DNA of 64,000 nt from Malacoraja senta. Taxonomy: Eukaryota. The DNA lies in NCBI GenBank assembly GCA_038087875.1, contig CM075977.1, positions 152,148,001 through 152,212,000 of the forward strand. The letters are read 5' to 3'. The position numbers and the translations under genes were made by a program. The notes under the pieces are model-generated. The model saw only the letters and a program-made list of their open reading frames with translations. It did not search any database and was not told the origin of the DNA. Below are positions 375 to 62,225 of the stretch, piece by piece. Position 1 is the first letter of the stretch; every line of letters starts with the position of its first letter.

Positions 375-497
375 ATGTTGATGAATGTGAAATTGGGGCT
401 CACAATTGTGACATGCATGCATTGTGTGCCAATGTTCCTGGAATCTTCCAGTGCAGCTGCCGTGAGGGATGGATTGGTGATGGTACCTCTTGTGTTG
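375..497 (+). CDS. FBN3: Fibrillin exon, cbEGF18 (FBN1 exon-32 equivalent)
   Basis: tttcag|...|gtgagt; 123 bp; [41 protein letters not shown]; six Cys and cbEGF consensus. Confidence 0.93.
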
Positions 498-3271: not shown

Positions 3272-3394
3272 ATCTCGATGAGTGCAACAATGAAACGCAT
3301 CAGTGTAACCTCAATGCTGAGTGTATGAACACACCTGGCTCGTATCGCTGCCTCTGCTCTGAAGGCTTCAGTGGTGATGGCTTCACATGTTCAG
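3272..3394 (+). CDS. FBN3: Fibrillin exon, cbEGF19 (exon-33 equivalent)
   Basis: ggtag|...|gtatga; 123 bp; [41 protein letters not shown]; absent from the ORF track. Confidence 0.93.
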
Positions 3395-4535
3395 GTATGA
3401 TGAAGGAATGAAACTGAAGCTCTTTTTGTTTAGAAAAATGTGTCCGTAGATGAGGACAGAAACAACACAATTTCACTTTTCAATGAGGTTGAAACGTAAC
3501 GTGTTAAAAGGACTTTGTTTAATGCTGCCCATGTGCTGCCCTCATCCCGCACCACAAATCCACTCATTCCTTCAGCAAAAATGGCAATCAAGACCAGGAA
3601 CACCAGCCAACTGAAATTTTACCCTTTCCTTTGTCTTGCCGCATCTCTACTGATTGCCAGGATGAGATTATTTATGTCCTGTGGCTTGGCACAAAATTGT
3701 CTGCTGTTATATTAAAAGAGCAACAGTTATTTTACAGATTGATACCTGAGTAATACTTAAAAACAGATTCTTAGTTCTGGTGCCCTGACATATCTGCAAT
3801 TGTAATGTGCAGCACATTAGAATGTTGTCTCACGTACCCCAGCAGCAATGTAGCCAGCTGCATTGTTGCCATGCTAAGATTTTCTCTTCCAACATTGCAA
3901 TTTACTCTAAACTTTGGAAAATTACTGTGCTCAATCAAAGTAATCTCAAAGTTAGTAACATACTGCCAATGTTTCAGAATCACATATATTATGTGTATTT
4001 TAGCCAATTAAACAAATCAAAACTTATATAATAATTCACATCACCTGGTCTGAAGTTAATAAATGAAATCCAGAATTGTTATGATGTCACATTACAGTGT
4101 GGTACGGTCTCACGGGAGTTGTGATAGCATCAGTTACAGTCAAGAATCCACAAAGACAACCTCACATTCTGCTGTGTTTGCTGGTACAGGTGCCAATTTT
4201 GCATTTCATCAATTATATAATATAAGCTTGGTGTCACTTCATTCCAACCTCCAAAAAGTTCTGTCATAATGAGCATTCTGTTAAAGTTTAACATGATTAA
4301 AGATTGATTTCATCTCATCAAATAACCTTGTCTGATATAAAACAAAAAAGGCATATGTGCTAAAGTTGCATGTTTATTTATTTAAAATAATCAGACTGAA
4401 ATTTATTTGAAAAAAGAAAAATATTTTTTTACATCACTCACTTCTAGGTAAAAGTATGAAAACATTCGCTCTGTTGAACATAGGAAATTGATTTTTGTTA
4501 GGTGATAGTCTTACTTTATGCACTATTATTTACAG

Positions 4536-4661
4536 ATGTGGATGAATGCGCAGAGAATGTGAATCTGTGTGAAAATGGCCAGTGCCTCAACACACCTGGA
4601 GGATACCGATGTGACTGTGAGATGGGATTCACACCAGCTTCTGATACCAGATCCTGTCAAG
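4536..4661 (+). CDS. FBN3: Fibrillin exon, cbEGF20 (exon-34 equivalent)
   Basis: tacag|...|gtaagt; 126 bp; [42 protein letters not shown]. Confidence 0.93.
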
Positions 4662-4677: not shown

Positions 4678-4825
4678 ATTCAGACCCGTCTGAAGAAGGG
4701 TCTTGATCCGAAACATCACCCATTCCTTCTCTCCAGAGATTCTGCCTGTCCCGATTAGTTACTCCAGCTTTTTGTGTCTATCTTCGGTTTAAACCAGCAG
4801 TAGCAGCAGCAGTTCCTTCCTACAC
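4678..4825 (+). mobile_element. Short PLE 3'-terminal derivative with hammerhead-like motif; 14-bp target-site duplication (TSD)
   Basis: ctgaagaagggtcttgatccgaaacatcaccc at 4690; flanks aagttcatgtgctt (4664-4677) and aagttcacgtgctt (4826-4839). Confidence 0.8.
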
Positions 4826-6848: not shown

Positions 6849-6971
6849 ATATTGATGAATGTTCATTTGATAATATCTGTGTCTTTGGCACCTGCCTGAA
6901 CTTTCAGGGTGTGTTCAGGTGTGTATGTGATGATGGCTACGAACTGGACAGAAGTGGAGGCAACTGTACAG
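6849..6971 (+). CDS. FBN3: Fibrillin exon, cbEGF21 (exon-35 equivalent)
   Basis: tctag|...|gtagga; 123 bp; [41 protein letters not shown]. Confidence 0.93.
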
Positions 6972-11031: not shown

Positions 11032-11154
11032 ATATTAATGAGTGTGCTGATCCAGTAAATTGTATCAATGGTTTATGCGTCAATATGCCTGGCGATTACC
11101 TGTGCAACTGCCCTGCAGATTTTGAGCTTAATCCAAGTGGAATTGGCTGTGTTG
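11032..11154 (+). CDS. FBN3: Fibrillin exon, cbEGF22 (exon-36 equivalent)
   Basis: tacag|...|gtaagt; 123 bp; [41 protein letters not shown]. Confidence 0.93.
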
Positions 11155-11830: not shown

Positions 11831-12102
11831 CAAAATGCTGGAGTAACTCAGCGGGACAGGCAGCATCTCTGGAGAAAAGGAATGGGTGACGTTTCGGGTT
11901 GAGACCATTCTTCAGTGTCTGAGACGCTTCTTCCGAGTCTGAAGAAGGGTCTCGACCCGAAACATCAAGTCTGAAGAAGGTTCTCAATCCGAAACATCAC
12001 CCATTTCTTCTCACCAGAGATGCTGCCTAACCCGCCGAATTATCCAGAATTTTGTATCTATCTTCGGTTTAAACCAGCATCTGTATTTCCTTCCTACACA
12101 TT
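11831..12102. mobile_element. PLE-derived composite: inverted tail plus direct tail with tandem hammerhead motifs
   Basis: Reverse copy ~11826-11915, forward copy ~11936-12100; flanking duplication gctacctttagaca / gctacttttagaca. Confidence 0.8.
11939..12002 (+). ncRNA. Two tandem minimal hammerhead ribozyme-like motifs
   Basis: CUGAAGA-A-GGGU-CUCG-ACCC-GAAAC-AUC, then CUGAAGA-AGGUUCUCAAUCC-GAAAC-AUC-ACC. Confidence 0.6.
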
Positions 12103-13461: not shown

Positions 13462-13623
13462 ATACTCGTGTGGGGAATTGTTTTTTGGAGTATGGCCAAC
13501 GAGGTGACGGAGGCCTGTCCTGCAGTGTCGACATTGGTGTTGGTGTCACTCGTGCTTCATGCTGTTGCTCTCTGGGAAGTGCCTGGGGTAACCCTTGTGA
13601 AATCTGCCCTGATGTCAATTCAA
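13462..13623 (+). CDS. FBN3: Fibrillin exon, TB4 first part with RGD motif (exon-37 equivalent)
   Basis: cgcag|...|gtatgt; 162 bp; [54 protein letters not shown]; CCC triplet of TB domains. Confidence 0.93.
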
Positions 13624-14600: not shown

Positions 14601-14821
14601 NNNNNNNNNNNNNNNNNNNNNNNNNNNNNNNNNNNNNNNNNNNNNNNNNNNNNNNNNNNNNNNNNNNNNNNNNNNNNNNNNNNNNNNNNNNNNNNNNNNN
14701 NNNNNNNNNNNNNNNNNNNNNNNNNNNNNNNNNNNNNNNNNNNNNNNNNNNNNNNNNNNNNNNNNNNNNNNNNNNNNNNNNNNNNNNNNNNNNNNNNNNN
14801 NNNNNNNNNNNNNNNNNNNNN
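14601..14821. other. Assembly gap (221 N)
   Basis: Run of N; exon order is collinear across it. Confidence 0.98.
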
Positions 14822-15791: not shown

Positions 15792-15860
15792 CTGAATACA
15801 AGATACTTTGTCCAGGAGGTGAAGGATTTAAGCCCAATGCTATCACTGTCATTTTAGAGG
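15792..15860 (+). CDS. FBN3: Fibrillin exon, TB4 second part (exon-38 equivalent)
   Basis: cacag|...|gtaagt; 69 bp; (T)[22 protein letters not shown]. Confidence 0.92.
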
Positions 15861-16247: not shown

Positions 16248-16351
16248 GTCTGAGAAAGGGTCCTGATCAGAAACATCACTTGTCCATGTTCTCCAGAGGT
16301 GTTGCCTGACCCGTTGAGTTACTCCAGCACTTTGTGTCCTTTTGTGTAAAC
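16248..16351 (+). mobile_element. Degenerate PLE 3' tail
   Basis: ctgagaaagggtcctgatcagaaacatcac...gagttactccagcac. Confidence 0.65.
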
Positions 16352-16473: not shown

Positions 16474-17719
16474 TCATCTGCTCCTTTTGATGTTCTGTTT
16501 ACCATCATGTACTGTGGCTGCTTCTTTGCGGATATGATCAGCCAGGTTGGTGATGTTTTCACTTGCATCAGGGATATATGTGCAACATGCTGGTCCTATT
16601 ACAGCACATGTTCCCCCTCTTTCTGCTAGGAGGAAATCCGAAACCATTTGATTCTGCAGGGCAACTGTCCGGATGACCACAGTCTCAGCATTTATTTCTT
16701 TAATAGTTATGGAGGTATCATTGGCAACCTTTTCTAACACAGAGGCTAGATTGATGCTGCCTCTCTCCACCTTTCCCACTCCACACCATGGGAATGCAAT
16801 AGCAACAAACCTTTCAGTCTCAGTGATATCCCCTTTTATCCATGGTGACTGGGTGTACATTTCTGATAAGGAGGTGGAGTGGCGAATGAAAAGCACCACA
16901 TAGGCCAAATAACAGGAACCTGACCAATCCTGGGACATCCAGGCATAAACCTTATGGTTAAAAAAAAGTAGTTACCATTGTAGGTGGTAAAGGATTCTTC
17001 CGAGAGGGGAAACCAGGTGTCTTGAAAAAGATTTCCAGTTGAACAGTGGCCATAATGTCTCCCGTATGTATACCATCATAGGGACCATCAGAGACATTAA
17101 AATATTGTTGGCACAAACTGCCCCCACATTATGGCCTCTCCTCTGTCGCCTGTTAAGGCAACTTGCCCCCTCCGGCCTCCCTTCGCCAGAGGTATTAGTA
17201 AGGGCCAAGAAAAGGGAATGTCAGGAACAACTGTAGTTGGGCTGGTACCACCGCAAGAAAGTGTTTAAGGGGGGGGATACCTCCTTTAAAATGGGTAGGT
17301 GCGTGTGTACATACCCAATAGCTGGAAAGATTATTTATTTCTGCATACTTATAAGCCATATATAAAAAAACATATGAACATTATCTCCATTTTAAGTGTT
17401 ATGTCGTTCACCGCCTCTCCTTTCCCGCCTCCTATACCTTAAACTAATCTGGCATGCCTTGTCACCACAGCGTATGTAACAACCATTACTTCAAACACCA
17501 GTTATGAACATTTTATGGAAAACTGCACTATGTCTCGTTAATTGTGTCAGCGTCCATTTCCATGCATCAGACATTAGTAAAGCATTGTTACATGTTACCA
17601 CTTTGCCAAAACATAAATACACATTTTGGTTAATTGATTCTTCACATATTTTCTGGACAGTTTCATTCTGGTCGACCAAGATCATACAGCAGTTATCGCT
17701 ACCAACTGGTACTTCATGT
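16474..17719 (-). pseudogene. env: ERV env remnant (SU, degenerate cleavage site, TM ectodomain; membrane anchor missing)
   Basis: ATG overlaps the pol stop (ACATGA) and starts a hydrophobic MKYQLVAITAV; fusion-peptide-like RFVAIAFPW; immunosuppressive domain and CX6CC. Confidence 0.8.
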
Positions 17720-18850
17720 TTCACCGTCCTGGTTCTTCACCTGTTTACAATGCGAAGCATGAATCCAGTTCGTTTTTCCTGCATATTTTCCTGCAGTATT
17801 TATTACCAGAAGCACCTTGCCCATATTGGAGATAGGGCATGTTTCTGTTTATGGCCTTTAACCATTATCCAATATACCCCGGACTTGTACTGTAACATGG
17901 CTCCGAGGTGACTTGCCCTTGCGCCTCCTGTACGCATTCCCTATTTTCCTTTTGGGCCGTCAGAATTCTTCTACAATATTCTACCATTTGTCTCGCTCCT
18001 CGTAAAGTAACATCCTCTCTACCATCCCATCCTAGTGGTGTTCTCATTACTCTTCCCATGATTACTTCATATGGGCTTAGGCCAGTCTGGGGGTCAGGAG
18101 TCATTCTCACACTCGTTAGCACAAAGGGTAGTGCATCAGGCCATTTCATTCCAGTTTCGTGACAACATTTTGCCAATTTGGTCTTGATCCTCCCATTGTG
18201 TCTTTCCACCATGCCTGATGATTGTGGGCGATATAGGCAATGTAATTTCTGTTTCACTCCCTGTGCCATGCAAACTGCTTGCATTATTTCCCTGTAAGAT
18301 CCGATCCTCTGTCACTATCTAAGTATCCTGGTGATCCATACCACCAAATTATTTCTCTTAACAATAATTTTACTACAGTGGTGGTGTCAGCTTTTCTAGT
18401 AGCGAAAGCTTCCACCCATTTAGAGAAGGTATGTACAATAACTAATACATATTCCTTCCCTTCTTCTTTAGGTAATTGTATAACATCTATCTGTAATCGT
18501 TCCAAAGGTTCCTCTCCCTTCATCACATGAGTCTGGCGCGTTTGTACTCTTTTTCCCTGCGTTGTACTTGCGAGATACTGCACATCCTGCGCAGTACCAA
18601 ATACTGCTTTGGAAGAAAATCCCGGTGCATACCAGTGTTTGTATAGTAATTTAATCATCCCCCCTTTGCTCACGTGACTTTGTCCGTGAGCAACAGCTGC
18701 TAAATAGGGAAACATCTGTTTAAGAACAATTTCCTGAATGTCCCTCAATAAATATGTCAGGATTCCAAAAGAAATGATAAGATGGTAAAGGGAAGTGTAA
18801 GTGATAAAGGGCCTCATGGAAGCACCTTTGGCTACCTTATCAGCCATATC
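17716..18850 (-). pseudogene. pol: ERV pol remnant (RNase H end and integrase)
   Basis: ORFs 18284-18847 and 17865-18284 join by frameshift; DDE-region motifs; C-terminus WIHASHCKQVKNQDGET-stop. Confidence 0.85.
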
Positions 18851-19636: not shown

Positions 19637-19816
<180 letters not shown>

Positions 19817-20314: not shown

Positions 20315-20440
20315 TCAGACTTGGTCTCGACCCAAAAAGTCACCTATCCATGTTCTTCAGGGATGCCGTCTGACCTGCTGAGTAACTCCAGCACTTCTTG
20401 TCCTTTTGTGTATTAACCAACATCTACAGTTCTTAGTTTC
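20315..20440 (+). mobile_element. Degenerate PLE 3' tail
   Basis: ggtctcgacccaaaaagtcacc...ctgagtaactccagca. Confidence 0.65.
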
Positions 20441-21242: not shown

Positions 21243-21368
21243 ATATTGATGAATGCATCACCTACCTTGGCATCTGTGGACCAGGCACATGCTACAACAC
21301 ACTAGGCAACTACACCTGTGTCTGTCCTCCAGAGTACATGCAGATAAATGGTGGAAACAACTGTATGG
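21243..21368 (+). CDS. FBN3: Fibrillin exon, cbEGF24 (exon-40 equivalent)
   Basis: cacag|...|gtgagt; 126 bp; [42 protein letters not shown]. Confidence 0.93.
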
Positions 21369-22733: not shown

Positions 22734-22883
22734 ACATGAGGAAAAGCCTATGCTACCGGCACTACAATGAAACCTGTGAGAATGAGCTTGGCTTCAACCT
22801 AACCCAAAAAATGTGTTGCTGTTCCTACAATGTTGGTAAAGGCTGGAACAAACCTTGTGAACCCTGTCCAACCCCTGCAACAT
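22734..22883 (+). CDS. FBN3: Fibrillin exon, TB5 first part (exon-41 equivalent)
   Basis: ttcag|...|gtgagt; 150 bp; [50 protein letters not shown]. Confidence 0.93.
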
Positions 22884-33100: not shown

Positions 33101-33620
33101 CCCAACTTAGTCTTGTGCCAGCAGTGAAACCCAGACCACAGATATATCCTGGAAAGTATTAAATTGTGTTTTCAGAAATAAAACCTGAACAGAAATAACA
33201 GTGCTCTACCAGTGATGTATATTCAATTTGTATTCTTTCCCATGTCAGAACAATTTCATTTTATGTTACTATTGGCTTTTTTACTCTGGTCTCTATCTGT
33301 TAAAACAAGTGGATTAAATGCCATTCAGTTTCTAACTAAACCTAACCTCACATACTTCCTGATTCTTAAATATATTTACTAATTCTGGAGAATTCTAGTG
33401 ACTTTGAGTCATGAACAGAAACATTTATATCCGTAAAATTATTAATTGAATCATCTAGATAAATGTCAAAAGTGCTTAGTTCGAACAAGGAATCCCACAA
33501 ATAAGCAAACACTTAAAACCATTTGCAGGTTGGATGTCAGAAATATTTGTGTTAAAATGGAATGAAATTTCATGAATGTGTAATGAATGTGCAATTTGTT
33601 GATATGATTTCATATTTTAG

Positions 33621-33692
33621 CTGAATACCAGTTGCTGTGTGGAAATCAAGGTCCTGGCTATACCATTGACTTTGGAACTGGAAAACCAATTG
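33621..33692 (+). CDS. FBN3: Fibrillin exon, TB5 second part (exon-42 equivalent); last exon before the 200-N gap
   Basis: tttag|...|gtaagt; 72 bp; (S)EYQLLCGNQGPGYTIDFGTGKPI. Confidence 0.9.
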
Positions 33693-33714
33693 GTAAGTGG
33701 AGAGATTCCTTTGT

Positions 33715-33835
33715 CCTGCCACACCCCTTTTCCAGTTTTCTTCTCCCTCCCTACAATCAGTCCAAAGAAGGGTCTCAGCCCAAAACGTCACCAATCCATG
33801 TTCTCCAGAGATGCAGCCTGCAGTTCATTGGCATT
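33715..33835 (+). mobile_element. Degenerate PLE 3' tail
   Basis: ccaaagaagggtctcagcccaaaacgtcacc...agagatgcagcctg. Confidence 0.65.
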
Positions 33836-34719
33836 TCTTTGTTTCTACATTCTCCCATGTTACATGTGCCCAAAGGTCCTTTTAAAATATTTTACTTTGC
33901 ACAAAATATATTTCAGGGGAATCTATGGTTAATTGTAAATCAAGAACACATACAACATGTAATTCCCACACCAATAGTCGCAGTATGCTTCTATGTTGTT
34001 CGTTATATCAATATCCCAGTGATGAGGTAGGAGGATAAATTACAGGAAGTGAACACTACTCCAAAAATCAAAGCACAGGAAAGTCGTAAACCCAATTTAT
34101 TCTTAAACCTGTTGTTAGGAACAGCGTGGGCTTACTCTGAACTTCTGAGGCCTAGCCGGGCACCAAATTGTATTGAATTAGGCACAGTATAAAAACAAAT
34201 GTTCAATAAGAGGTCAAGTGCTGCCTCCATGTGTGAGGTTGAAACTTGGGTGTCTAATATCTGTGACCACTGCTAGTAGGACTTGTGTGAAGTGGATTTT
34301 AAAATATTATGTTGAAGTACCTTGTTTTAGGGTTTAACTTATTTCCCCTTGTTTCATTTTTGTTTCATTTTAAATATGTAATCAGTAATGCTCTAAACAT
34401 GAATATCTGTGTAAGTATAATCCTTGATAATTGTTTGAGATTATTTACTTGGAGCAAAATGGCTGAAATTGTTTGTAAAGATTGGAGAGCAGTCTTGTAA
34501 TATGTCCTTCGTCTGCCTTGCTACCTTCAACTTGGCAGCACAGCCTTTGCTCGGTTGAGGGGCAAAGATTTAAAGATCAAGTCCTCGGTCCAAAATCAAA
34601 ACTCATTCCCTACTTGTGGACTCTCCTTTATACTTCTGCAACTAGAGTACCTACAGCAGGCATCTCATGGCACTGGAAAAATATCATCAATGCAATGGAA
34701 GGATAAGTGAACCATCATC

Positions 34720-35130
34720 TATGTTCTACATAGAACATAGTATAGCACAGGAATAGGCCCTTCCGCCCACAATATCTGTGCCGAACATGATGCCAAGTCC
34801 AACTCTTATCTGCCTGCACATTATCCATATCCCTCCATTCCCTACATATCCTTCTTTCCCAGTGCCTACTTAGACAGCGATGTTGGGAACACCATGTCAT
34901 TCACAGGTACGTGGACAGTAAAAGTCTAGAGGGATATAGGCCAATTGCAAGCAAGTGGGACTGGCTTGGATGAGGCATCTTGATTGCCATGGAAGAGCTG
35001 GACCCAAGGCCACTTTTCCATGCTCTGTGACTGCTCGACGTGGATAAAGAGTAGATAGAACATAGATGTACATATCCCTCCACTCCCTGCATATCACACC
35101 TGGATATTTCTTAAATGCCACTGTCATATC
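34720..35130. mobile_element. Cluster of CR1 3'-end fragments in both orientations
   Basis: catagaacatag tail and CR1 3' UTR motifs. Confidence 0.65.
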
Positions 35131-35492
35131 CTAATTCAGGATTGTATTGGGAACATTGAGACCATGTATCAAAGGCATGCAGAAACACGCTTAAGTGGTT
35201 GAATGAGTAGACCGCCTCACAAGCTCCCTAACCGCCTGCCTCATCAGTGATGGGGTCTGCAGTTTCTAGATTGGCCTCAATAACCACATTAGAAACAACA
35301 AGAACCAGAGTAGAAGCAAGTCATCCATGATCCTGATCAAGATTACACTGAGGAGATTACTCAGAAGGCTGACTATTGTGTTGCACAACACAAATAGTAA
35401 TTCACACTTAGAGGCATGGGGAGTTGGTTTCATTTATTTTAGAATTAGAGCAGCTTCAGCTAGGTGAAATAAAGAAACAGTTTTAAGCTTTA

Positions 35493-35600
35493 CTAGACCA
35501 ATTGCAGACCCGTTGGGTCTGCTCCCCCAACGCACCCATCTCCTACCGGTAGCCTCCACGGGAGGTGTGGTCCTCCACTCAACCCGTTGCCGAAGGTAAG
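35493..35600 (-). mobile_element. Helitron-like 3' terminus
   Basis: Minus strand: hairpin GCAGACCC-AAC-GGGTCTGC, 7 nt, then CTAG followed by T; 5' limit not determined. Confidence 0.6.
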
Positions 35601-35888
35601 ATTCGGAAGACTCAGCAAAGATCATAGCTCGTGAGCCTCCCCCGGCACTGGAGTTGAAAAAAAATCCCAATTGCAATACCAATTGACCCTCCCCCTCCTG
35701 TCCTGCCAGGAGCTATGATGGCGACATTGTTGCAAATGTGCACTTGCTCTGAGATGCCATTGAGCTGAAAAGTTCAGAGTTCCTGCCAGATTTCCTGTCT
35801 TGCAACTTTGTATCGAAGTGTGTTGGAAGCTCTGAGAAATGATTTTTATTGGAAAAACCATTTTAAATCCAAAGTTTTATCAGATCTT

Positions 35889-36088
35889 NNNNNNNNNNNN
35901 NNNNNNNNNNNNNNNNNNNNNNNNNNNNNNNNNNNNNNNNNNNNNNNNNNNNNNNNNNNNNNNNNNNNNNNNNNNNNNNNNNNNNNNNNNNNNNNNNNNN
36001 NNNNNNNNNNNNNNNNNNNNNNNNNNNNNNNNNNNNNNNNNNNNNNNNNNNNNNNNNNNNNNNNNNNNNNNNNNNNNNNNNNNNNNNN
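35889..36088. other. Assembly gap (exactly 200 N) at which fibrillin exon order resets
   Basis: Run of N; round size typical of an unsized scaffolding join. Confidence 0.98.
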
Positions 36089-36206
36089 GTAAAAATTATA
36101 AATGGTCCCTAGTGTGTAGCATAGCGTTGGGGTTCGTGGTGATCACTGGTCAGTTGGACTTGGTGGGCTGAAGGCCTTCTTCAGCGCTGTATCTCTAGAG
36201 TCTAAA
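36089..36206 (+). mobile_element. 3' end of an HE1/V-SINE-like element truncated by the gap
   Basis: Matches 51099-51205 (ccctagtgtgt...gctgtatctcta). Confidence 0.7.
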
Positions 36207-36628
36207 GATAGAAAACTAACAAGTTTCTTGTAAAAGTTAAAATTAAACTTATGAATAAAGGTAGTATATTTAAAGGTTTAAAATGGAAATAGCTGTGAAC
36301 AGTTTGATAACAACTAGGCTGCAACAATAGTAGGACTCTAAAAGCCTGTTACCTTGATGTTCCCACGAGAAAACAGGAATAAAAGTTAGTTTATCAAGCT
36401 CTTTTCTTGCAGACCTTACATAATTACCATTGTTAAACTCTCTTTGGTCCATTTAATTTTTGAGATAGTTCCAACTTCCTCTTGGCTAGCACGTGATGTG
36501 AAATATCCTCTTATCTCCTCCACAAAGCAATGATTGGAAAACTGCCGGGCAAAATCCAATCCACTTTGGAATCTGTGTTGAGGTTGAGAAGTGCTTTATT
36601 TATGTGTTACGATGGGAATTTGTTCCAG

Positions 36629-36775
36629 GTACTTTTACCATTAATCAAACAAAACTGGACATCTGTAAGCACTTCATCAATCTCTGCAAGAATGGACGGT
36701 GTATTCTCACACCCACTGGTCACCGCTGTGAATGTAACATGGGCTTTAAGGAAGATGTACCTGGAGAATGTGTTG
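36629..36775 (+). CDS. FBN3: Fibrillin exon, non-calcium EGF4 (exon-11 equivalent); first exon after the gap
   Basis: tccag|...|gtaaga; 147 bp; GTFTINQTKLDICKHFINLCKNGRCILTPTGHRCECNMGFKEDVPGECV; acceptor position less certain. Confidence 0.85.
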
Positions 36776-39360
36776 GTAAGATTTAACAATGTATTTAAAA
36801 TAGCTTTCTAAATGATTGTCATCTTATCTGATCAGTAGGTTTGTAATCAGTATAAAAGGACACATTGTACAAAAGGACAAAGCTTTAAACTACTCTCTGT
36901 CGGTACTCTAGCATATCTTCCTCACAGATAGAAAAGAGCATTCTTTAATTTCAAATTCTTCCATGCACTGTGGCTTTCCAATTACTGTGCAATGATGCAA
37001 ATTAGGTTAGTATGCTTCAATTTCCTGTAATAAGTAACACAGGAGTAAAGGCCATGGATTTTTTTCCCTCCCATATCCTTCAATCTGTATCGGTAATTCT
37101 TGTTACTTACTCGTTCTCAGTGCTCAGCTGATTTGTTCCAGTGAAGCAGGCACTTGTGGCTTGAGAGTCTGTAGTCATAGATCAAACAATACAGATCTGT
37201 TACTATCATATTAAAAAATATATTTGTTTCTAAAACGTTATGAATGTAAATATTGTGTTAAATTTAAATTATAATTAAGGCACCAGATGTTACTGCGATA
37301 TAGATTTGAGACCACCATACTGATAGAAGGATCGTTCTCCCTGTGGATTCTTTTACTCTCCCAACCCATGTCATCCAGCCGCTACCTGTCTGATAGATAC
37401 AGGCAATCTCCGTGTAATGACACGGGGATGTCCATCAGTCTATTTTATACGTCAGAAAATGCACAAAAATCATTTGATGTGTCAACCAGACTTCTGCAAT
37501 ATTGTAATGAATAACATCAAAAGCATAAGAAAATAACAATGACTACATGTGGAAAGATAAGAGAAACTAGTTCTGCAATTTGTAGGAATGAATGTATGTA
37601 CATACGTTAGACTTTTGAATTTAACTATATTGTGGGAACTACTTCACATGTATGGATGGAAGTCCATAAATTGGGCATTCATAACCTGTACCATCATATT
37701 GGCAAAGTTAAGTGTCCAAGGACAGGGAGCTCAAATATGCATTAGACCCATTGAATATATAAACAAGGGGTCCATTGTCAATTGTCAGGTCCACACTATT
37801 CAGGATTCCCAAGCTTATCATTGCATTTTTGACAATAGGCAAGCTTTTCTATAAAAACAAAGAACAAATAGCTGTGGAGCTACATGAGCAGACGTTTTCA
37901 AATATCTCCACTGTTAACATCCTTAATGCATTCTGAAGTGAAATACACCAGCTCCTAATGGAGGAGCATCAGGTTCAAGCACTTCAAAACAAAAAACCTG
38001 CCAAAGACGCCAGGGCGCACTGCTGGTTCTGTCATAGAGTTCCCACTGTTGTCTGCCAAGATTAGAATATAAACCATATTTACACGATGCAATTGATCGT
38101 AAAATGCTCTAGCATCAAACTTTCCCAACTGCTTCACCAGGTCTGATCGTAAATCTTACAGAATGGTTAACAGAAAGGCAGGACCTGGATTGAGTTTCCC
38201 CAAGTTAGTTTGGAAAATGCTGCTTGTTCTTGCAAGATTTGGCATCTCAACCCAAACCTTGTGTTGTTGAACTTGGAATTGGAACCAAGGTGCGACATTC
38301 TCAACATTGACGTAAAGCACTTTTTACCTTCTGATAGAAAATAATTTTAATCATCTCTGAATAAATAGATCAGCCCTTATTTTTACATAGTGACAACTAG
38401 TTCTAGATTCTCTCACACAAGGAAATATCCTTTCCATATCCTTCATGTCACGATCCTTCTGAATAGTTTATTGCAAATTCCCCCATCTCTCTTCTTAACG
38501 GCAGCGTCTACAAGCCTCATCTGTGACTCTTCGTGTCCGAATTGCTTCCAAAGCATTTACATTGATATTTTGATATTTATTTAACATTTAAATATTTAAA
38601 TATGCTTCAAATAGAAAAATAAACACTGTATACTATACTCCAGGTGTGTTCTCCCTTCTGACCTATATTACTGATGCATAACCTCTCCTTTTGTATTACA
38701 TTCCCCAAACTCTGTAATTTAAAAAAACGTCTGTACTCCATCTGGCGCCAGATTCTTCCATGGATTAAGAATTACTTAAACAAAAACAGAAATTGCAGGA
38801 AATATTCAACATTTCAGGCAGCATTCATAGATTAAGAAAGCAAGTTTCAGGTCAAAGGCTCTTCAGATTTTTAGATTTTGCTTACTCAATTAGAAGAACA
38901 ATTTTCTTATCTTATTGCACCTCATACCTGATGTCCTCATGAGGTTGAATTCCAGATTTCTCTGGGCTTTCATTTCTCCAACTCCTTCAATTACAGATGG
39001 TTTTTGTGCAAAATGTGATTTGTAGCAATTTGCAGAGTTGTGCTCATTCTCCATTGAATAAAACATTTAAAATCATGTATCTTATTTTACTGAGCCCAGC
39101 AATATTTAACAGCAAAGAAGAACATTTTATTGCAACTCAAATTGCTCAAAATAAGAGTTATCGAAAGCAACAGACTGCACAAGAATGGGGCAAGAGTTAC
39201 ATTAAATAATGATTGTTAAGATTTGTCTGCAAGTAACAATATAAAATGTTTTAGATGAGTTAGTCTTTTTTTCCTCCATTTAAGACAAGATCAAATATTT
39301 GAATGATGAGGGAGGCTTTCTCTAAATTTTCACTAATATCTCATTTATTGATCTCTGTAG

Positions 39361-39480
39361 ATTTTGATGAGTGTACTTCAAGCCCCTGTACAAATGGTGA
39401 TTGTATTAACACTCCAGGCTCCTACCATTGTAAATGCCACACTGGTTTCCAGAGCACCCCCACCAAACAATCCTGCATTG
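39361..39480 (+). CDS. FBN3: Fibrillin exon, cbEGF3 (exon-12 equivalent)
   Basis: tgtag|...|gtaagt; 120 bp; [40 protein letters not shown]. Confidence 0.93.
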
Positions 39481-39744
39481 GTAAGTGATAGAACAGTCAA
39501 ACCTCTAAATATCAAAGAAAATAATGGTTAATGAAAATGTACAATAGGTGCCACAGTATTTCAGAAAAATACAGGTTTATGTTTTGGATGTTGACAGAAT
39601 TAATATGACTCACTTACCCAAGAGCAGTCAAATCAGAAGAAAGTAAATTTTTTGCTGTTGATGAATTGGTTAATTGTATGTTGTCACCTTTGGAAGCATT
39701 TTGGATGCTCTCAATCATTATAAGTTAATTGTAATGTAGAGATG

Positions 39745-42744: not shown

Positions 42745-42870
42745 ATATTGATGAGTGCATTCACAATGGACTTCTTTGCAAAAATGGTCGTTGTGTGAAC
42801 ACGGATGGAAGCTTCCAATGTATTTGTCATGCTGGCTTTGAACTGACTCCAGATGGAAAAAATTGCATTG
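42745..42870 (+). CDS. FBN3: Fibrillin exon, cbEGF4 (exon-13 equivalent)
   Basis: ttcag|...|gtaaaa; 126 bp; [42 protein letters not shown]. Confidence 0.93.
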
Positions 42871-43274: not shown

Positions 43275-43397
43275 ATCATGATGAGTGTGCCACCACCAAC
43301 ATGTGTCTAAATGGCATGTGCATCAATGAAGATGGAAGTTTCAAGTGCATTTGCAAGCCTGGTTTTGTGCTGGCACCAAATGGACGATATTGTGTTG
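43275..43397 (+). CDS. FBN3: Fibrillin exon, cbEGF5 (exon-14 equivalent)
   Basis: tatag|...|gtaaga; 123 bp; [41 protein letters not shown]. Confidence 0.93.
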
Positions 43398-44505: not shown

Positions 44506-44628
44506 ACATTGATGAATGCCAGAAACCTGGAATCTGTATGAACGGCCGATGCCTCAACACTGAAGGCTCTTTCAGGTGTGAGTGCCCCCGAGGCCTGGCT
44601 GTTGGTGTAGATGGGCGGGTTTGTGTCG
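44506..44628 (+). CDS. FBN3: Fibrillin exon, cbEGF6 (exon-15 equivalent)
   Basis: ttcag|...|gtaaga; 123 bp; [41 protein letters not shown]. Confidence 0.93.
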
Positions 44629-47872: not shown

Positions 47873-48025
47873 ATACCCACATGCGCAGCACATGCTATGG
47901 AGGAATTAAGAAAGGACTGTGTATCCGCCCATTCTCTGGAGCAGTGACAAAATCAGAATGCTGCTGTGCAAGTCTGGATAATGGATTTGGAGAGCCATGT
48001 CAGCCCTGCCCAGCGAAAAACTCAG
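47873..48025 (+). CDS. FBN3: Fibrillin exon, TB2 first part (exon-16 equivalent)
   Basis: tttag|...|gtatat; 153 bp; [51 protein letters not shown]. Confidence 0.93.
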
Positions 48026-49200: not shown

Positions 49201-49690
49201 AGACTAAGCGGAGGCTTGGCGATCGTTTCACCGAACACCTCCGGTCGGTCCGCAATGGCCAACCTGACCTCCCGGTAGCTCAGCACTTCAACTCCCCCTC
49301 CCATTCCGTATCTGACCTCTCTGTCCTGGGTCTCCTCCATGGCCACAGCGAGGAACACCGTAAATTGGAGGAAATGCACCTCATATTCCGCTTGGGCAGT
49401 CTGCATCCTGGGGGCTTGAACATTGAATTCTCCCAATTCTGCTAGCCCTTGCTGTCCCCTCCCCTTCATCAGCCCTCTGGTTGTCTCCTCCCCTCCCCCA
49501 GCCCTCGGGCTCCTCCTCCGCCTTTTTCCTTTTTTCCTTTCTTCTCCCCACCCCCTATCAGTCTGAAGAAGGGTTTCGGCCCGAAACGTTGCCTATTTCC
49601 TTCGCTCCATAGATGCTGCTGCACCCGCTGAGTTTCTCCAGCATTTTTGTGTACCTTCGATTTTCCAGCATCTGCAGTTCCTTCTTTAAC
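49201..49690 (+). mobile_element. 5'-truncated Penelope-like retroelement: GIY-YIG endonuclease C-terminus plus terminal repeat
   Basis: TKRRLGDRFTEHLRSVRNGQPDLPVAQHFNSPSHSVSDLSVLGLLHGHSEEHRKLEEMHLIFRLGSLHPGGLNIEFSQFC-stop, then a pyrimidine tract and the hammerhead-containing tail. Confidence 0.88.
49563..49593 (+). ncRNA. Minimal hammerhead ribozyme-like motif in the PLE terminal repeat
   Basis: CUGAAGA-A-GGGU-UUCG-GCCC-GAAAC-GUU; helix III reduced to palindromic ACGU; helix I weak. Confidence 0.65.
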
Positions 49691-50949: not shown

Positions 50950-51228
50950 TCAACCCAGGTTCGATCCTGACTATGGGTGTTGTCTGTACGGAGTTTGTAC
51001 TTTCTCCGCGTGACCTGCGTGGGTTTTCTCCGAGATCTTTGGTTTCCTCCCACACTCCAAAGACGTACCGGTTTGCAGGTTAATTGGCTTGGTATAAATG
51101 TAAATTATCCCTAGTGTGTGTAGGATAGTGTTAGTATGTGGGGATTGCTGGTTGGTGCGGACTCGGAGGGCCTAAGGCCTGTTTCCGCGCCGTATCTCTA
51201 AACTAAACTAAACTAAATTAAAAAACTA
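50950..51228 (+). mobile_element. tRNA-derived SINE (HE1/V-SINE-like), 5'-truncated
   Basis: B-box ggttcgatcc; core gtttgtac.ttctcc...gtgggtttt...ggtttcctcccaca.tccaaagac; (taaac)n tail. Confidence 0.8.
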
Positions 51229-51693: not shown

Positions 51694-51747
51694 CTGAATT
51701 CCAAGCCCTGTGCAGCAGCGGAATTGGTATCACTGCAGATGGAAGAG
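51694..51747 (+). CDS. FBN3: Fibrillin exon, TB2 second part (exon-17 equivalent)
   Basis: tatag|...|gtatag; 54 bp; AEFQALCSSGIGITADGR. Confidence 0.9.
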
Positions 51748-53867: not shown

Positions 53868-53993
53868 ACATTAATGAATGTGCTCTGGATCCGGATATCT
53901 GCCCCAATGGAATATGTGAAAATCTTCGGGCCAGCTACCGCTGTATCTGTAACATTGGTTATGAGTCAGACATTAGTGGAAAGAATTGTGTGG
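53868..53993 (+). CDS. FBN3: Fibrillin exon, cbEGF7 (exon-18 equivalent)
   Basis: aatag|...|gtaagt; 126 bp; [42 protein letters not shown]. Confidence 0.93.
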
Positions 53994-56401: not shown

Positions 56402-56527
56402 ACATTGACGAATGCGCAGATAACAGGCTCCTGTGTGATAATGGGCTATGCCGGAACACACCTGGTGGCTACACCTGCAGTTGCCCAAAGGGTTACCTCT
56501 TCAAACCAGACTCCGAAACATGTGAAG
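56402..56527 (+). CDS. FBN3: Fibrillin exon, cbEGF8 (exon-19 equivalent)
   Basis: tctag|...|gtgaat; 126 bp; [42 protein letters not shown]. Confidence 0.93.
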
Positions 56528-59472: not shown

Positions 59473-59592
59473 ATGTGAATGAATGTGAGAACAGTCCTTG
59501 TGTTAACGGAGAATGCAGGAATACAGCAGGTTCATTCTCCTGTGAGTGCTCCACTGGTAGCAAACTGGATTCAAGCAGAACTGTCTGCATTG
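59473..59592 (+). CDS. FBN3: Fibrillin exon, cbEGF9 (exon-20 equivalent)
   Basis: cccag|...|gtaagg; 120 bp; DVNECENSPCVNGECRNTAGSFSCECSTGSKLDSSRTVCI. Confidence 0.93.
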
Positions 59593-62087: not shown

Positions 62088-62225
62088 ACAGCGTGAAAGG
62101 AACTTGTTGGTTGAACATTCAAAACAGTCGTTGTGAAGTAAACATCAATGGAGCAACGTTGAAGTCACAATGTTGTGCTACGCTGGGAGCTGCATGGGGA
62201 AGTCCTTGTGAGCGCTGTGAACTAG
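62088..62225 (+). CDS. FBN3: Fibrillin exon, hybrid domain 2 first part (exon-21 equivalent)
   Basis: aacag|...|gtacga; 138 bp; [46 protein letters not shown]. Confidence 0.93.

What the first reader, a model, noticed from the sequence alone, without database searches (positions are those of the whole stretch)
33621..36775. Fibrillin exon order is permuted: exons 32-42 precede exons 11-21 across a 200-N gap
Seen: left of the gap the exons run cbEGF18-22, TB4, cbEGF23-24, TB5. Right of it, on the same strand, they restart at EGF4, cbEGF3-6, TB2, cbEGF7-9, hybrid 2. The expected next exon (cbEGF25) is absent, no exon occurs twice, the gap is exactly 200 N, and its right edge starts inside a SINE. 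Known: fibrillin domain order is conserved. Inference: most likely two contigs of one gene were mis-ordered. However, all introns are phase 1, so 33692->36629 would splice in frame. A real internal duplication would therefore give an elongated fibrillin, and an automated annotator could output a plausible but false permuted protein.
Basis: partly seen in the sequence, partly recalled or inferred. Interest (0 to 1): 0.7.

Follow-up and report, generated by a model that had tools for sequence, protein, structure and literature searches.

The report
Mis-ordered contigs inside a fibrillin-2 gene
Two intact blocks of one fibrillin-2 gene sit in the wrong order on either side of a 200-N placeholder gap, and a close relative's full-length mRNA has the normal order, so this is almost certainly an assembly error and not a rearranged gene.

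Summary
The window holds 22 intact + strand exons of a batoid fibrillin-2 (FBN2) gene, all phase 1 with AG/GT ends.

- **Left of the gap** (35889-36088, 200 N): 11 exons, cbEGF18-22, TB4 (with RGD), cbEGF23-24, TB5. They equal Mobula FBN2 residues 1342-1781.
- **Right of the gap:** 11 exons, EGF4, cbEGF3-6, TB2, cbEGF7-9, first hybrid-2 exon. They equal residues 461-910.
- No exon occurs twice, and cbEGF25 is absent.

- **Relative's mRNA:** a 9,519-nt spliced contig from a very close relative carries both gap-flanking exons (0-1 mismatch) in the normal order. EGF4 is joined to cbEGF3, exactly 3,627 nt follow, then the TB5 exon, which runs on into cbEGF25 (DIDECREIPG). Mobula FBN2 predicts the same 3,627 nt.
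- **No 33692->36629 joint** was listed; the tool showed only part of its joint table.
- **Copy number:** unique-sequence depth in the species' own DNA run is the same on both sides (about 24x against 25x), so nothing is duplicated.
- **Gap edges:** both lie in very high-copy repeats, and none of the listed DNA contig pieces reaches across.

Verdict: scaffolding artefact, not a real feature. The missing test is this species' own long reads, Hi-C and RNA.

The parts
375..497 (+). FBN2 exon, cbEGF18
   Evidence: AG/GT ends, 123 nt, phase 1. Best match P0270 1340-1381 at 88%.
3272..3394 (+). FBN2 exon, cbEGF19
   Evidence: P0270 1381-1422 at 90%.
4536..4661 (+). FBN2 exon, cbEGF20
6849..6971 (+). 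FBN2 exon, cbEGF21
11032..11154 (+). FBN2 exon, cbEGF22
13462..13623 (+). FBN2 exon, first part of TB4, with the RGD motif
   Evidence: PDB 1uzj (cbEGF22-TB4-cbEGF23) at E 4e-19. P0270 1547-1605 at 91.5%. Boundaries.
14601..14821 (.). Assembly gap of 221 N inside the TB4 intron; exon order across it is normal
   Evidence: TB4a lies before it and TB4b after it.
15792..15860 (+). FBN2 exon, second part of TB4 ([12 protein letters not shown]...)
   Evidence: P0270 1600-1623.
19659..19784 (+). FBN2 exon, cbEGF23
21243..21368 (+). FBN2 exon, cbEGF24
22734..22883 (+). FBN2 exon, first part of TB5
   Evidence: P0270 1708-1757 at 96%.
33621..33692 (+). FBN2 exon, second part of TB5; last exon before the gap
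   Evidence: P0270 1758-1781. It is 72/72 identical to the relative's mRNA contig (X16 record 1, positions 3809-3880). That mRNA continues after it with ATATTGATGAATGC..., which reads DIDECREIPG, the start of cbEGF25.
35360..35888 (.). Left gap edge: intron sequence made of high-copy repeats
   Evidence: Word depth is 4e3 to 2e5, against about 24 for unique DNA, in X19 and X21. No unique contig is listed reaching 35888.
35889..36088 (.). Assembly gap of exactly 200 N; the join is unsupported by sequence
   Evidence: None of the listed contig pieces of X19 or X21 bridges it.
36089..36160 (.). Right gap edge: tail of a very high-copy interspersed repeat
   Evidence: Depth is about 9e4 in the bin 35960-36159. 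The X21 contig ends exactly at 36089, and the X19 contig runs only 15 letters past it. A 74%-identical copy lies at 51092-51200.
36629..36775 (+). FBN2 exon, EGF4 (not calcium-binding); first exon after the gap
   Evidence: P0270 460-508 at 82%. It lies at positions 7629-7775 of the relative's mRNA contig with 1 mismatch.
39361..39480 (+). FBN2 exon, cbEGF3
   Evidence: P0270 508-548 at 100%. The joint 36774->39360 (GT..AG) is present in the relative's mRNA contig.
42745..42870 (+). FBN2 exon, cbEGF4
43275..43397 (+). FBN2 exon, cbEGF5
44506..44628 (+). FBN2 exon, cbEGF6
47873..48025 (+). FBN2 exon, first part of TB2
   Evidence: P0001 residues 662-711; P0270 670-727.
51694..51747 (+). FBN2 exon, second part of TB2 (EFQALCSSGIGITADGR)
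53868..53993 (+). FBN2 exon, cbEGF7
56402..56527 (+). FBN2 exon, cbEGF8
59473..59592 (+). FBN2 exon, cbEGF9
62088..62225 (+). FBN2 exon, first part of hybrid domain 2
   Evidence: PDB 2w86 (cbEGF9-hyb2-cbEGF10) at E 7e-16. P0270 866-913 at 94%.

Best explanation
The window shows one ordinary, intact fibrillin-2 gene whose assembly contigs were placed in the wrong order during scaffolding. The contig or contigs carrying exons cbEGF18 to TB5 were put upstream of the contig carrying EGF4 to hybrid 2, in the same orientation. The two were joined by a fixed-size 200-N placeholder. Both contig ends stop in high-copy interspersed repeats inside introns, which is where assemblers break and where ordering evidence is weakest. 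In the animal, the gene is expected to run EGF4...hyb2, then cbEGF10...cbEGF17, then cbEGF18...TB5, then cbEGF25 onward, and to make a normal fibrillin-2.

Shown: exon identities, the canonical mRNA order in a close relative, equal copy number on both sides, and the lack of any listed bridging contig.

Inferred: that the species itself has the canonical order, and that the error arose at the scaffolding step. A swap of neighbouring contigs and a misplaced extra contig or haplotig cannot be told apart from within this window.
For: 1. **Same gene on both sides.** The left block is 94.5% and the right block 96.0% identical, without gaps, to Mobula hypostoma FBN2 residues 1342-1781 and 461-910. 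The paralogues score lower: FBN2b/FBN3 at 75-85% and FBN1 at about 71%.
2. **Canonical mRNA in a close relative**. X16 record 1 is a 9,519-nt spliced contig.
   - It places EGF4 (36628-36774) next to cbEGF3 (39360-39480) through a GT..AG joint.
   - It then reports '39480 -> 33621 goes back 5860, 3627 letters between'.
   - The TB5b exon matches 72/72 and is followed by letters that encode DIDECREIPG. That is the start of cbEGF25 in Mobula and Narcine FBN2.
   - The 3,627 nt equals the distance computed from Mobula FBN2 numbering.
3. **No 33692->36629 joint** appears among the joints listed for any of the four runs.
4. **Equal copy number.** Unique-sequence word depth in the species' own DNA run X19 is 23.5-24.9 left of the gap and 24.4-25.4 right of it. 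Relative E gives 38-40 on both sides.
5. **No listed bridging.** Both gap edges lie in repeats with depth 1e3 to 1e5, and contigs end at or near 36089.
6. **Placeholder gap.** The gap is exactly 200 N, while the other gap in the window is 221 N and keeps normal exon order. Fixed 100, 200 or 500-bp gaps are scaffolder placeholders, and Hi-C scaffolders are reported to make ordering and orientation errors (PMC11249255).
Against: - The mRNA evidence comes from a close relative (exons differ by 0-1 letters), not from the assembled species. No RNA run of that species was offered.
- The DNA data were short-read contigs, which break at repeats. Their failure to bridge the gap is weak evidence, and the tool listed only a small part of its piece and joint tables.
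- The rest of the scaffold cannot be read here. The positions of exons 1-10, 22-31 and 43-65 are unknown.
- Contigs can drop rare variants, so a minor junction isoform could be missed.
Confidence: 0.93

Rival explanations
1. This species, or the sequenced individual, has a real structural rearrangement. The exon block cbEGF18-TB5 really lies upstream of EGF4 in the genome, for example as a transposition or a heterozygous structural variant that disrupts one FBN2 allele.
For: The assembly as given shows this order on one strand. All introns are phase 1, so a TB5->EGF4 splice would stay in frame. No read from the species itself directly contradicts it.
Against: - The join is only a 200-N placeholder between two repeat-ended contigs, and no listed contig piece bridges it.
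- A relative whose exons differ by 0-1 letters makes a canonical full-length mRNA.
- All 22 exons are intact and 82-100% identical to Mobula FBN2 over exon-sized matches, as expected for a working gene.
- From general knowledge, fibrillin domain order is conserved across vertebrates. Here the domain order of Mobula FBN2 is canonical.
Confidence: 0.04
2. A real segmental duplication has inserted an extra copy of exons cbEGF18-TB5 into the intron before EGF4. This would give an elongated fibrillin-2, or a pseudo-exon block.
For: In-frame phase-1 exons make such a product possible. The window alone cannot show whether a second copy of these exons lies further downstream.
Against: - Word depth in the species' own DNA run is the same for the left block (about 24) and the right block (about 25). 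A recent extra copy would double it.
- The relative's mRNA has exactly 3,627 nt between cbEGF3 and TB5b, with no extra block, and no TB5->EGF4 junction was listed.
- The left-block exons show no decay. The alignment is gapless at 94.5% identity, and the TB5b exon is 72/72 identical to the relative's mRNA.
Confidence: 0.02
3. Two neighbouring fibrillin genes or paralogues meet here: the middle of one gene on the left and the 5' part of the next on the right. The missing exons would be hidden in the gap.
For: The gap length is unknown. Batoids carry several fibrillin paralogues (FBN1, FBN2, FBN2b/FBN3).
Against: - Both blocks match the same paralogue at the same level, 94.5% and 96.0% to Mobula FBN2. 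Other paralogues reach 85% or less.
- Both blocks lie in one mRNA contig of the relative.
- Depth is single-copy on both sides.
Confidence: 0.01

Closest known systems
Contig ordering errors at fixed-size scaffolding gaps (Hi-C or other scaffolders)
   Same: The gap has a round placeholder length of 200 N. The contigs end in interspersed repeats. The two neighbouring blocks keep their orientation but are in swapped order. Nothing in the listed data bridges the join. Ordering and orientation errors, and 100/200/500-bp placeholder gaps, are described in PMC11249255.
   Different: The scaffolding method of this assembly is not known to me. That 200 N is the default of one particular Hi-C scaffolder (YaHS) is my own recollection and was not verified here. 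A swap cannot be told from a misplaced extra contig or haplotig within this window.
Fibrillin-2 (FBN2) of batoid fishes, e.g. Mobula hypostoma XP_062925023.1 (P0270) and Narcine bancroftii XP_069784081.1 (P0263)
   Same: Each block has the same domain order. Alignments are gapless at 94-96% identity. RGD is present in TB4, and the intron pattern is phase 1.
   Different: In those proteins residues 461-910 come before residues 1342-1781. In this assembly the corresponding exon blocks are in the reverse order.
Disease-causing in-frame exon deletions and duplications in human FBN1/FBN2 (Marfan syndrome, congenital contractural arachnodactyly; from general knowledge)
   Same: Phase-1 cbEGF exons allow in-frame joins between non-neighbouring exons. 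This is why the false TB5->EGF4 join would look plausible.
   Different: Those are real genomic lesions seen in transcripts. Here the relative's transcript is canonical and depth shows no duplication.

Membership tests
Fibrillin family | Arrays of calcium-binding EGF modules broken up by 8-Cys TB modules and hybrid modules in the canonical order | tested here: met
   Within each block the order is canonical: cbEGF18-22/TB4/cbEGF23-24/TB5 and EGF4/cbEGF3-6/TB2/cbEGF7-9/hyb2. TB4 and hyb2 match solved FBN1 fragments 1uzj and 2w86.
Fibrillin family | RGD motif in TB4 | tested here: met
   The exon 13462-13623 contains ...GQRGDGG..., aligned to the RGD of 1uzj.
Fibrillin-2 orthologue (not FBN1 or FBN2b/FBN3) | Highest identity to FBN2 of related species, for both blocks | tested here: met
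   Mobula and Narcine FBN2 score 94-98%. FBN2b/FBN3 of Mobula, Narcine and Amblyraja score 75-85%. Shark FBN1-like scores about 71%. The glycine-rich linker that distinguishes FBN2 lies outside the window and was not seen.
Real permuted or duplicated fibrillin gene | Transcripts that join TB5 (33692) to EGF4 (36629) | tested here: not met
   No such joint is listed in any run. The relative's mRNA continues from 33692 into cbEGF25 and has EGF4 3.7 kb upstream. RNA of the species itself was not available.
Real permuted or duplicated fibrillin gene | Doubled read depth over a duplicated exon block | tested here: not met
   X19 unique depth is 23.5-24.9 left of the gap and 24.4-25.4 right of it.
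Real permuted or duplicated fibrillin gene | DNA reads that run continuously across 35889-36088 | tested here: inconclusive
   No listed contig piece bridges the gap. However, only short-read contigs were available, they break at the flanking repeats, and most pieces were not listed.
Scaffolding mis-order artefact | Join made of a fixed-size placeholder gap between contigs that end in repeats | tested here: met
   The gap is exactly 200 N. Both edges have depth 1e3 to 1e5.
Scaffolding mis-order artefact | The species' own long reads or Hi-C support the canonical order, and the other FBN2 exons lie where a swap predicts | not testable with these tools
   Only this 64-kb window is readable.

The most novel reading that the evidence does not exclude
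The order is real in this species or individual. A structural variant would have moved or copied the cbEGF18-TB5 exon block in front of EGF4 in FBN2. Because all introns are phase 1, that could give an in-frame fibrillin-2 with a permuted or extended domain order.
Probability: 0.04. Interest if true: 0.6.

Novelty: not a real feature. Interest (0 to 1): 0.08.

Why it matters
It has little biological weight, but it is useful for curation.

- The FBN2 locus of this assembly needs re-ordering at the 200-N join.
- Any gene model that splices 33692 to 36629 would be a false, in-frame, plausible-looking permuted fibrillin.
- More generally, genes built from many same-phase exons hide scaffolding errors from frame-based checks.
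- If the order were real, it would be a rare natural domain permutation in a highly conserved matrix protein.

Tried and rejected
- **Earlier findings.** Searching this genome's notes for 'fibrillin', 'cbEGF' and 'EGF' found nothing. The only nearby note concerns a retroelement.
- **SINE identity.** Rfam at gathering threshold and ARAGORN over the whole window found nothing, so the SINE identity of the right gap edge stays unproven. Only its high copy number is shown.
- **Raw RNA reads of relative E (X32).** These covered only repeats and none of the three exons, so they gave no junction evidence.
- **PDB search with the EGF4 exon.** It hit only generic EGF modules and was not diagnostic.
- **Annotated protein of this genome.** Three large protein searches were meant partly to find an annotated FBN2, possibly permuted. 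None of the listed hits was marked as encoded by the window.
- **Gap edges.** I looked for sequence shared between the two gap edges as a sign of overlapping contigs. There was none.
- **Default gap size of a named scaffolder.** A paper search did not yield a direct statement.
- **Gap letters.** I did not try to fill or read the N stretch.
Full report
**What is in the sequence**

The window has two N runs: 221 N at 14601-14821 and exactly 200 N at 35889-36088. A six-frame scan shows a series of Cys-rich open segments on the + strand only. With AG/GT ends and phase-1 boundaries these resolve into 22 exons, and every exon length is a multiple of three.

**Identity of the exons**

- The exon at 13462-13623 matches the solved human fibrillin-1 fragment cbEGF22-TB4-cbEGF23 (1uzj, E 4e-19), including the RGD.
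- The exon at 62088-62225 matches cbEGF9-hyb2-cbEGF10 (2w86, E 7e-16).
- A search of protein-cluster representatives with the TB2 exon returned a full-length fibrillin, P0001, which is Bufo bufo fibrillin-1.
- tblastn of P0001 placed the exons left of the 200-N gap at residues about 1316-1747 and those right of it at 447-899.
- Comparison with elasmobranch proteins shows the gene is fibrillin-2. The left block (440 aa) aligns without gaps at 94.5% to Mobula hypostoma FBN2 (P0270) residues 1342-1781. The right block (451 aa) aligns at 96.0% to residues 461-910.
- The FBN2b/FBN3 paralogues reach only 75-85% and FBN1 about 71%.
- Each of the 22 loci has one clear best position in P0270. Identity is 82-100% over exon-sized matches, against 61% or less for the runner-up. 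No locus maps best to residues 1-459, 914-1339 or 1782 onward.
- A pattern-based domain parse of P0270 gives the canonical 4 EGF, 43 cbEGF, 7 TB and 2 hybrid architecture. It labels the two blocks cbEGF18-22/TB4/cbEGF23-24/TB5 and EGF4/cbEGF3-6/TB2/cbEGF7-9/hyb2.

The 221-N gap sits inside the TB4 intron, and exon order across it is normal.

**The gap itself**

The 200-N run lies in intron sequence on both sides. It is 2.2 kb after the TB5b donor and 540 nt before the EGF4 acceptor, so no reading frame crosses it. The question is only whether the two sides are neighbours in the genome.

**The decisive test: public reads and contigs**

Run searches found four kinds of run:
- a DNA run of the window's own species (X19, all sampled words held);
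- DNA runs of relatives;
- RNA contig sets of a very close relative (organism A, 83% of the EGF4 exon's words);
- raw RNA reads of another relative.

I laid X19, X21, X32 and X16 on 33560-39540. X16 record 1 is a 9,519-nt contig, read here in mRNA sense.
- It holds EGF4 (window 36628-36774, 1 mismatch) joined directly to cbEGF3 (39360-39480). The 2,585-nt intron is removed at GT..AG, so it is a spliced transcript.
- The tool then reports '39480 -> 33621 goes back 5860, 3627 letters between'. The TB5b exon (33621-33692, 72/72 identical) therefore lies 3,627 nt downstream of cbEGF3 in the mRNA.
- From Mobula FBN2 numbering the expected distance is also 3,627 nt.
- After 33692 the contig continues with letters that translate to DIDECREIPG. 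That is the start of cbEGF25 in Mobula and Narcine FBN2.
- At 9.5 kb the contig fits a full-length FBN2 mRNA, whose coding sequence is about 8.66 kb.
- No 33692->36629 joint appears among the joints listed for any run. The tool showed only the best-supported part of its joint table.

**Copy number and continuity**

- In X19, unique stretches have word depth 23.5-24.9 left of the gap and 24.4-25.4 right of it. In relative E the values are 38-40 on both sides. Neither block is duplicated relative to the other.
- Both gap edges are high-copy repeats, with depth 4e3 to 2e5 on the left and about 9e4 on the right.
- The X21 contig ends exactly at 36089, and the X19 contig runs only 15 letters past it.
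- No listed contig piece bridges the gap.
- Short-read contigs break at such repeats, and most pieces were not listed, so this is only weak evidence against continuity. It does show that nothing supports the join.
- The two edges share no sequence.

**Interpretation**

The simplest account is a scaffolding error. Contigs of one normal FBN2 gene ended in intronic repeats. They were placed in the wrong order, in the same orientation, and joined by a fixed-length placeholder.
- Fixed 100, 200 or 500-bp gaps, and ordering and orientation errors of Hi-C scaffolders, are documented (PMC11249255).
- That 200 N is the default of one particular scaffolder is my recollection only.
- I cannot tell a plain swap of neighbouring contigs from a misplaced extra contig or haplotig, because the rest of the scaffold is not readable here.

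**Rivals**

- *Real rearrangement* (0.04). It is not directly excluded because the mRNA comes from a relative. It would need a placeholder gap to coincide with a true breakpoint in a gene whose exons are all intact.
- *Real duplication* (0.02). It conflicts with the equal depth and the exact canonical spacing in the mRNA.
- *Two adjacent paralogues* (0.01). It conflicts with both blocks matching the same orthologue and lying in one transcript.

**Annotation risk**

Because all introns are phase 1, a gene caller could join 33692 to 36629 in frame. None of the hits listed by three protein searches was marked as encoded by this window.

**Verdict**

It is not a biological feature, and its interest is low apart from assembly and annotation curation.

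Noticed in passing
window 14601-14821: A second assembly gap of 221 N lies inside the intron that splits TB4. Exon order across it is normal: TB4a at 13462-13623, TB4b at 15792-15860. Its odd length, unlike the round 200 N, suggests a gap of a different kind, perhaps one with an estimated size.
   Followed up: partly
window 16477-16971 (-) and 17868-18311 (-): These are open frames in the intron between TB4b and cbEGF23. The first has a weak match to the retroviral envelope family TLV_coat (PF00429, E 3.8e-4, below the curated cut-off). The second looks integrase-like by eye but had no Pfam match. This is probably a decayed endogenous retrovirus fragment on the minus strand.
   Followed up: partly
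window 33765-33830: This is an extremely high-copy short repeat, with word depth about 8e5 in the species' own DNA run and present in the RNA runs. Diverged copies lie at 4693-4748, 11857-11912, 16271-16308 and 20323-20372. It may belong to the retroelement-derived family noted earlier at 49201-49690, but I did not test that link.
   Followed up: partly
window 34252, 34559, 34587: The DNA run of the same species (X19) carries a different letter at full depth at these intron positions. That run is therefore either from another individual or it marks base errors in the assembly.
   Followed up: no
window 34798-35074: RNA reads of relative E (X32) skip 275 nt here, with CC..AT ends, 118 reads and 33 other letters in between. 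This looks like transcribed copies of a repeat family that differ from this copy by an internal segment, not splicing of FBN2.
   Followed up: no
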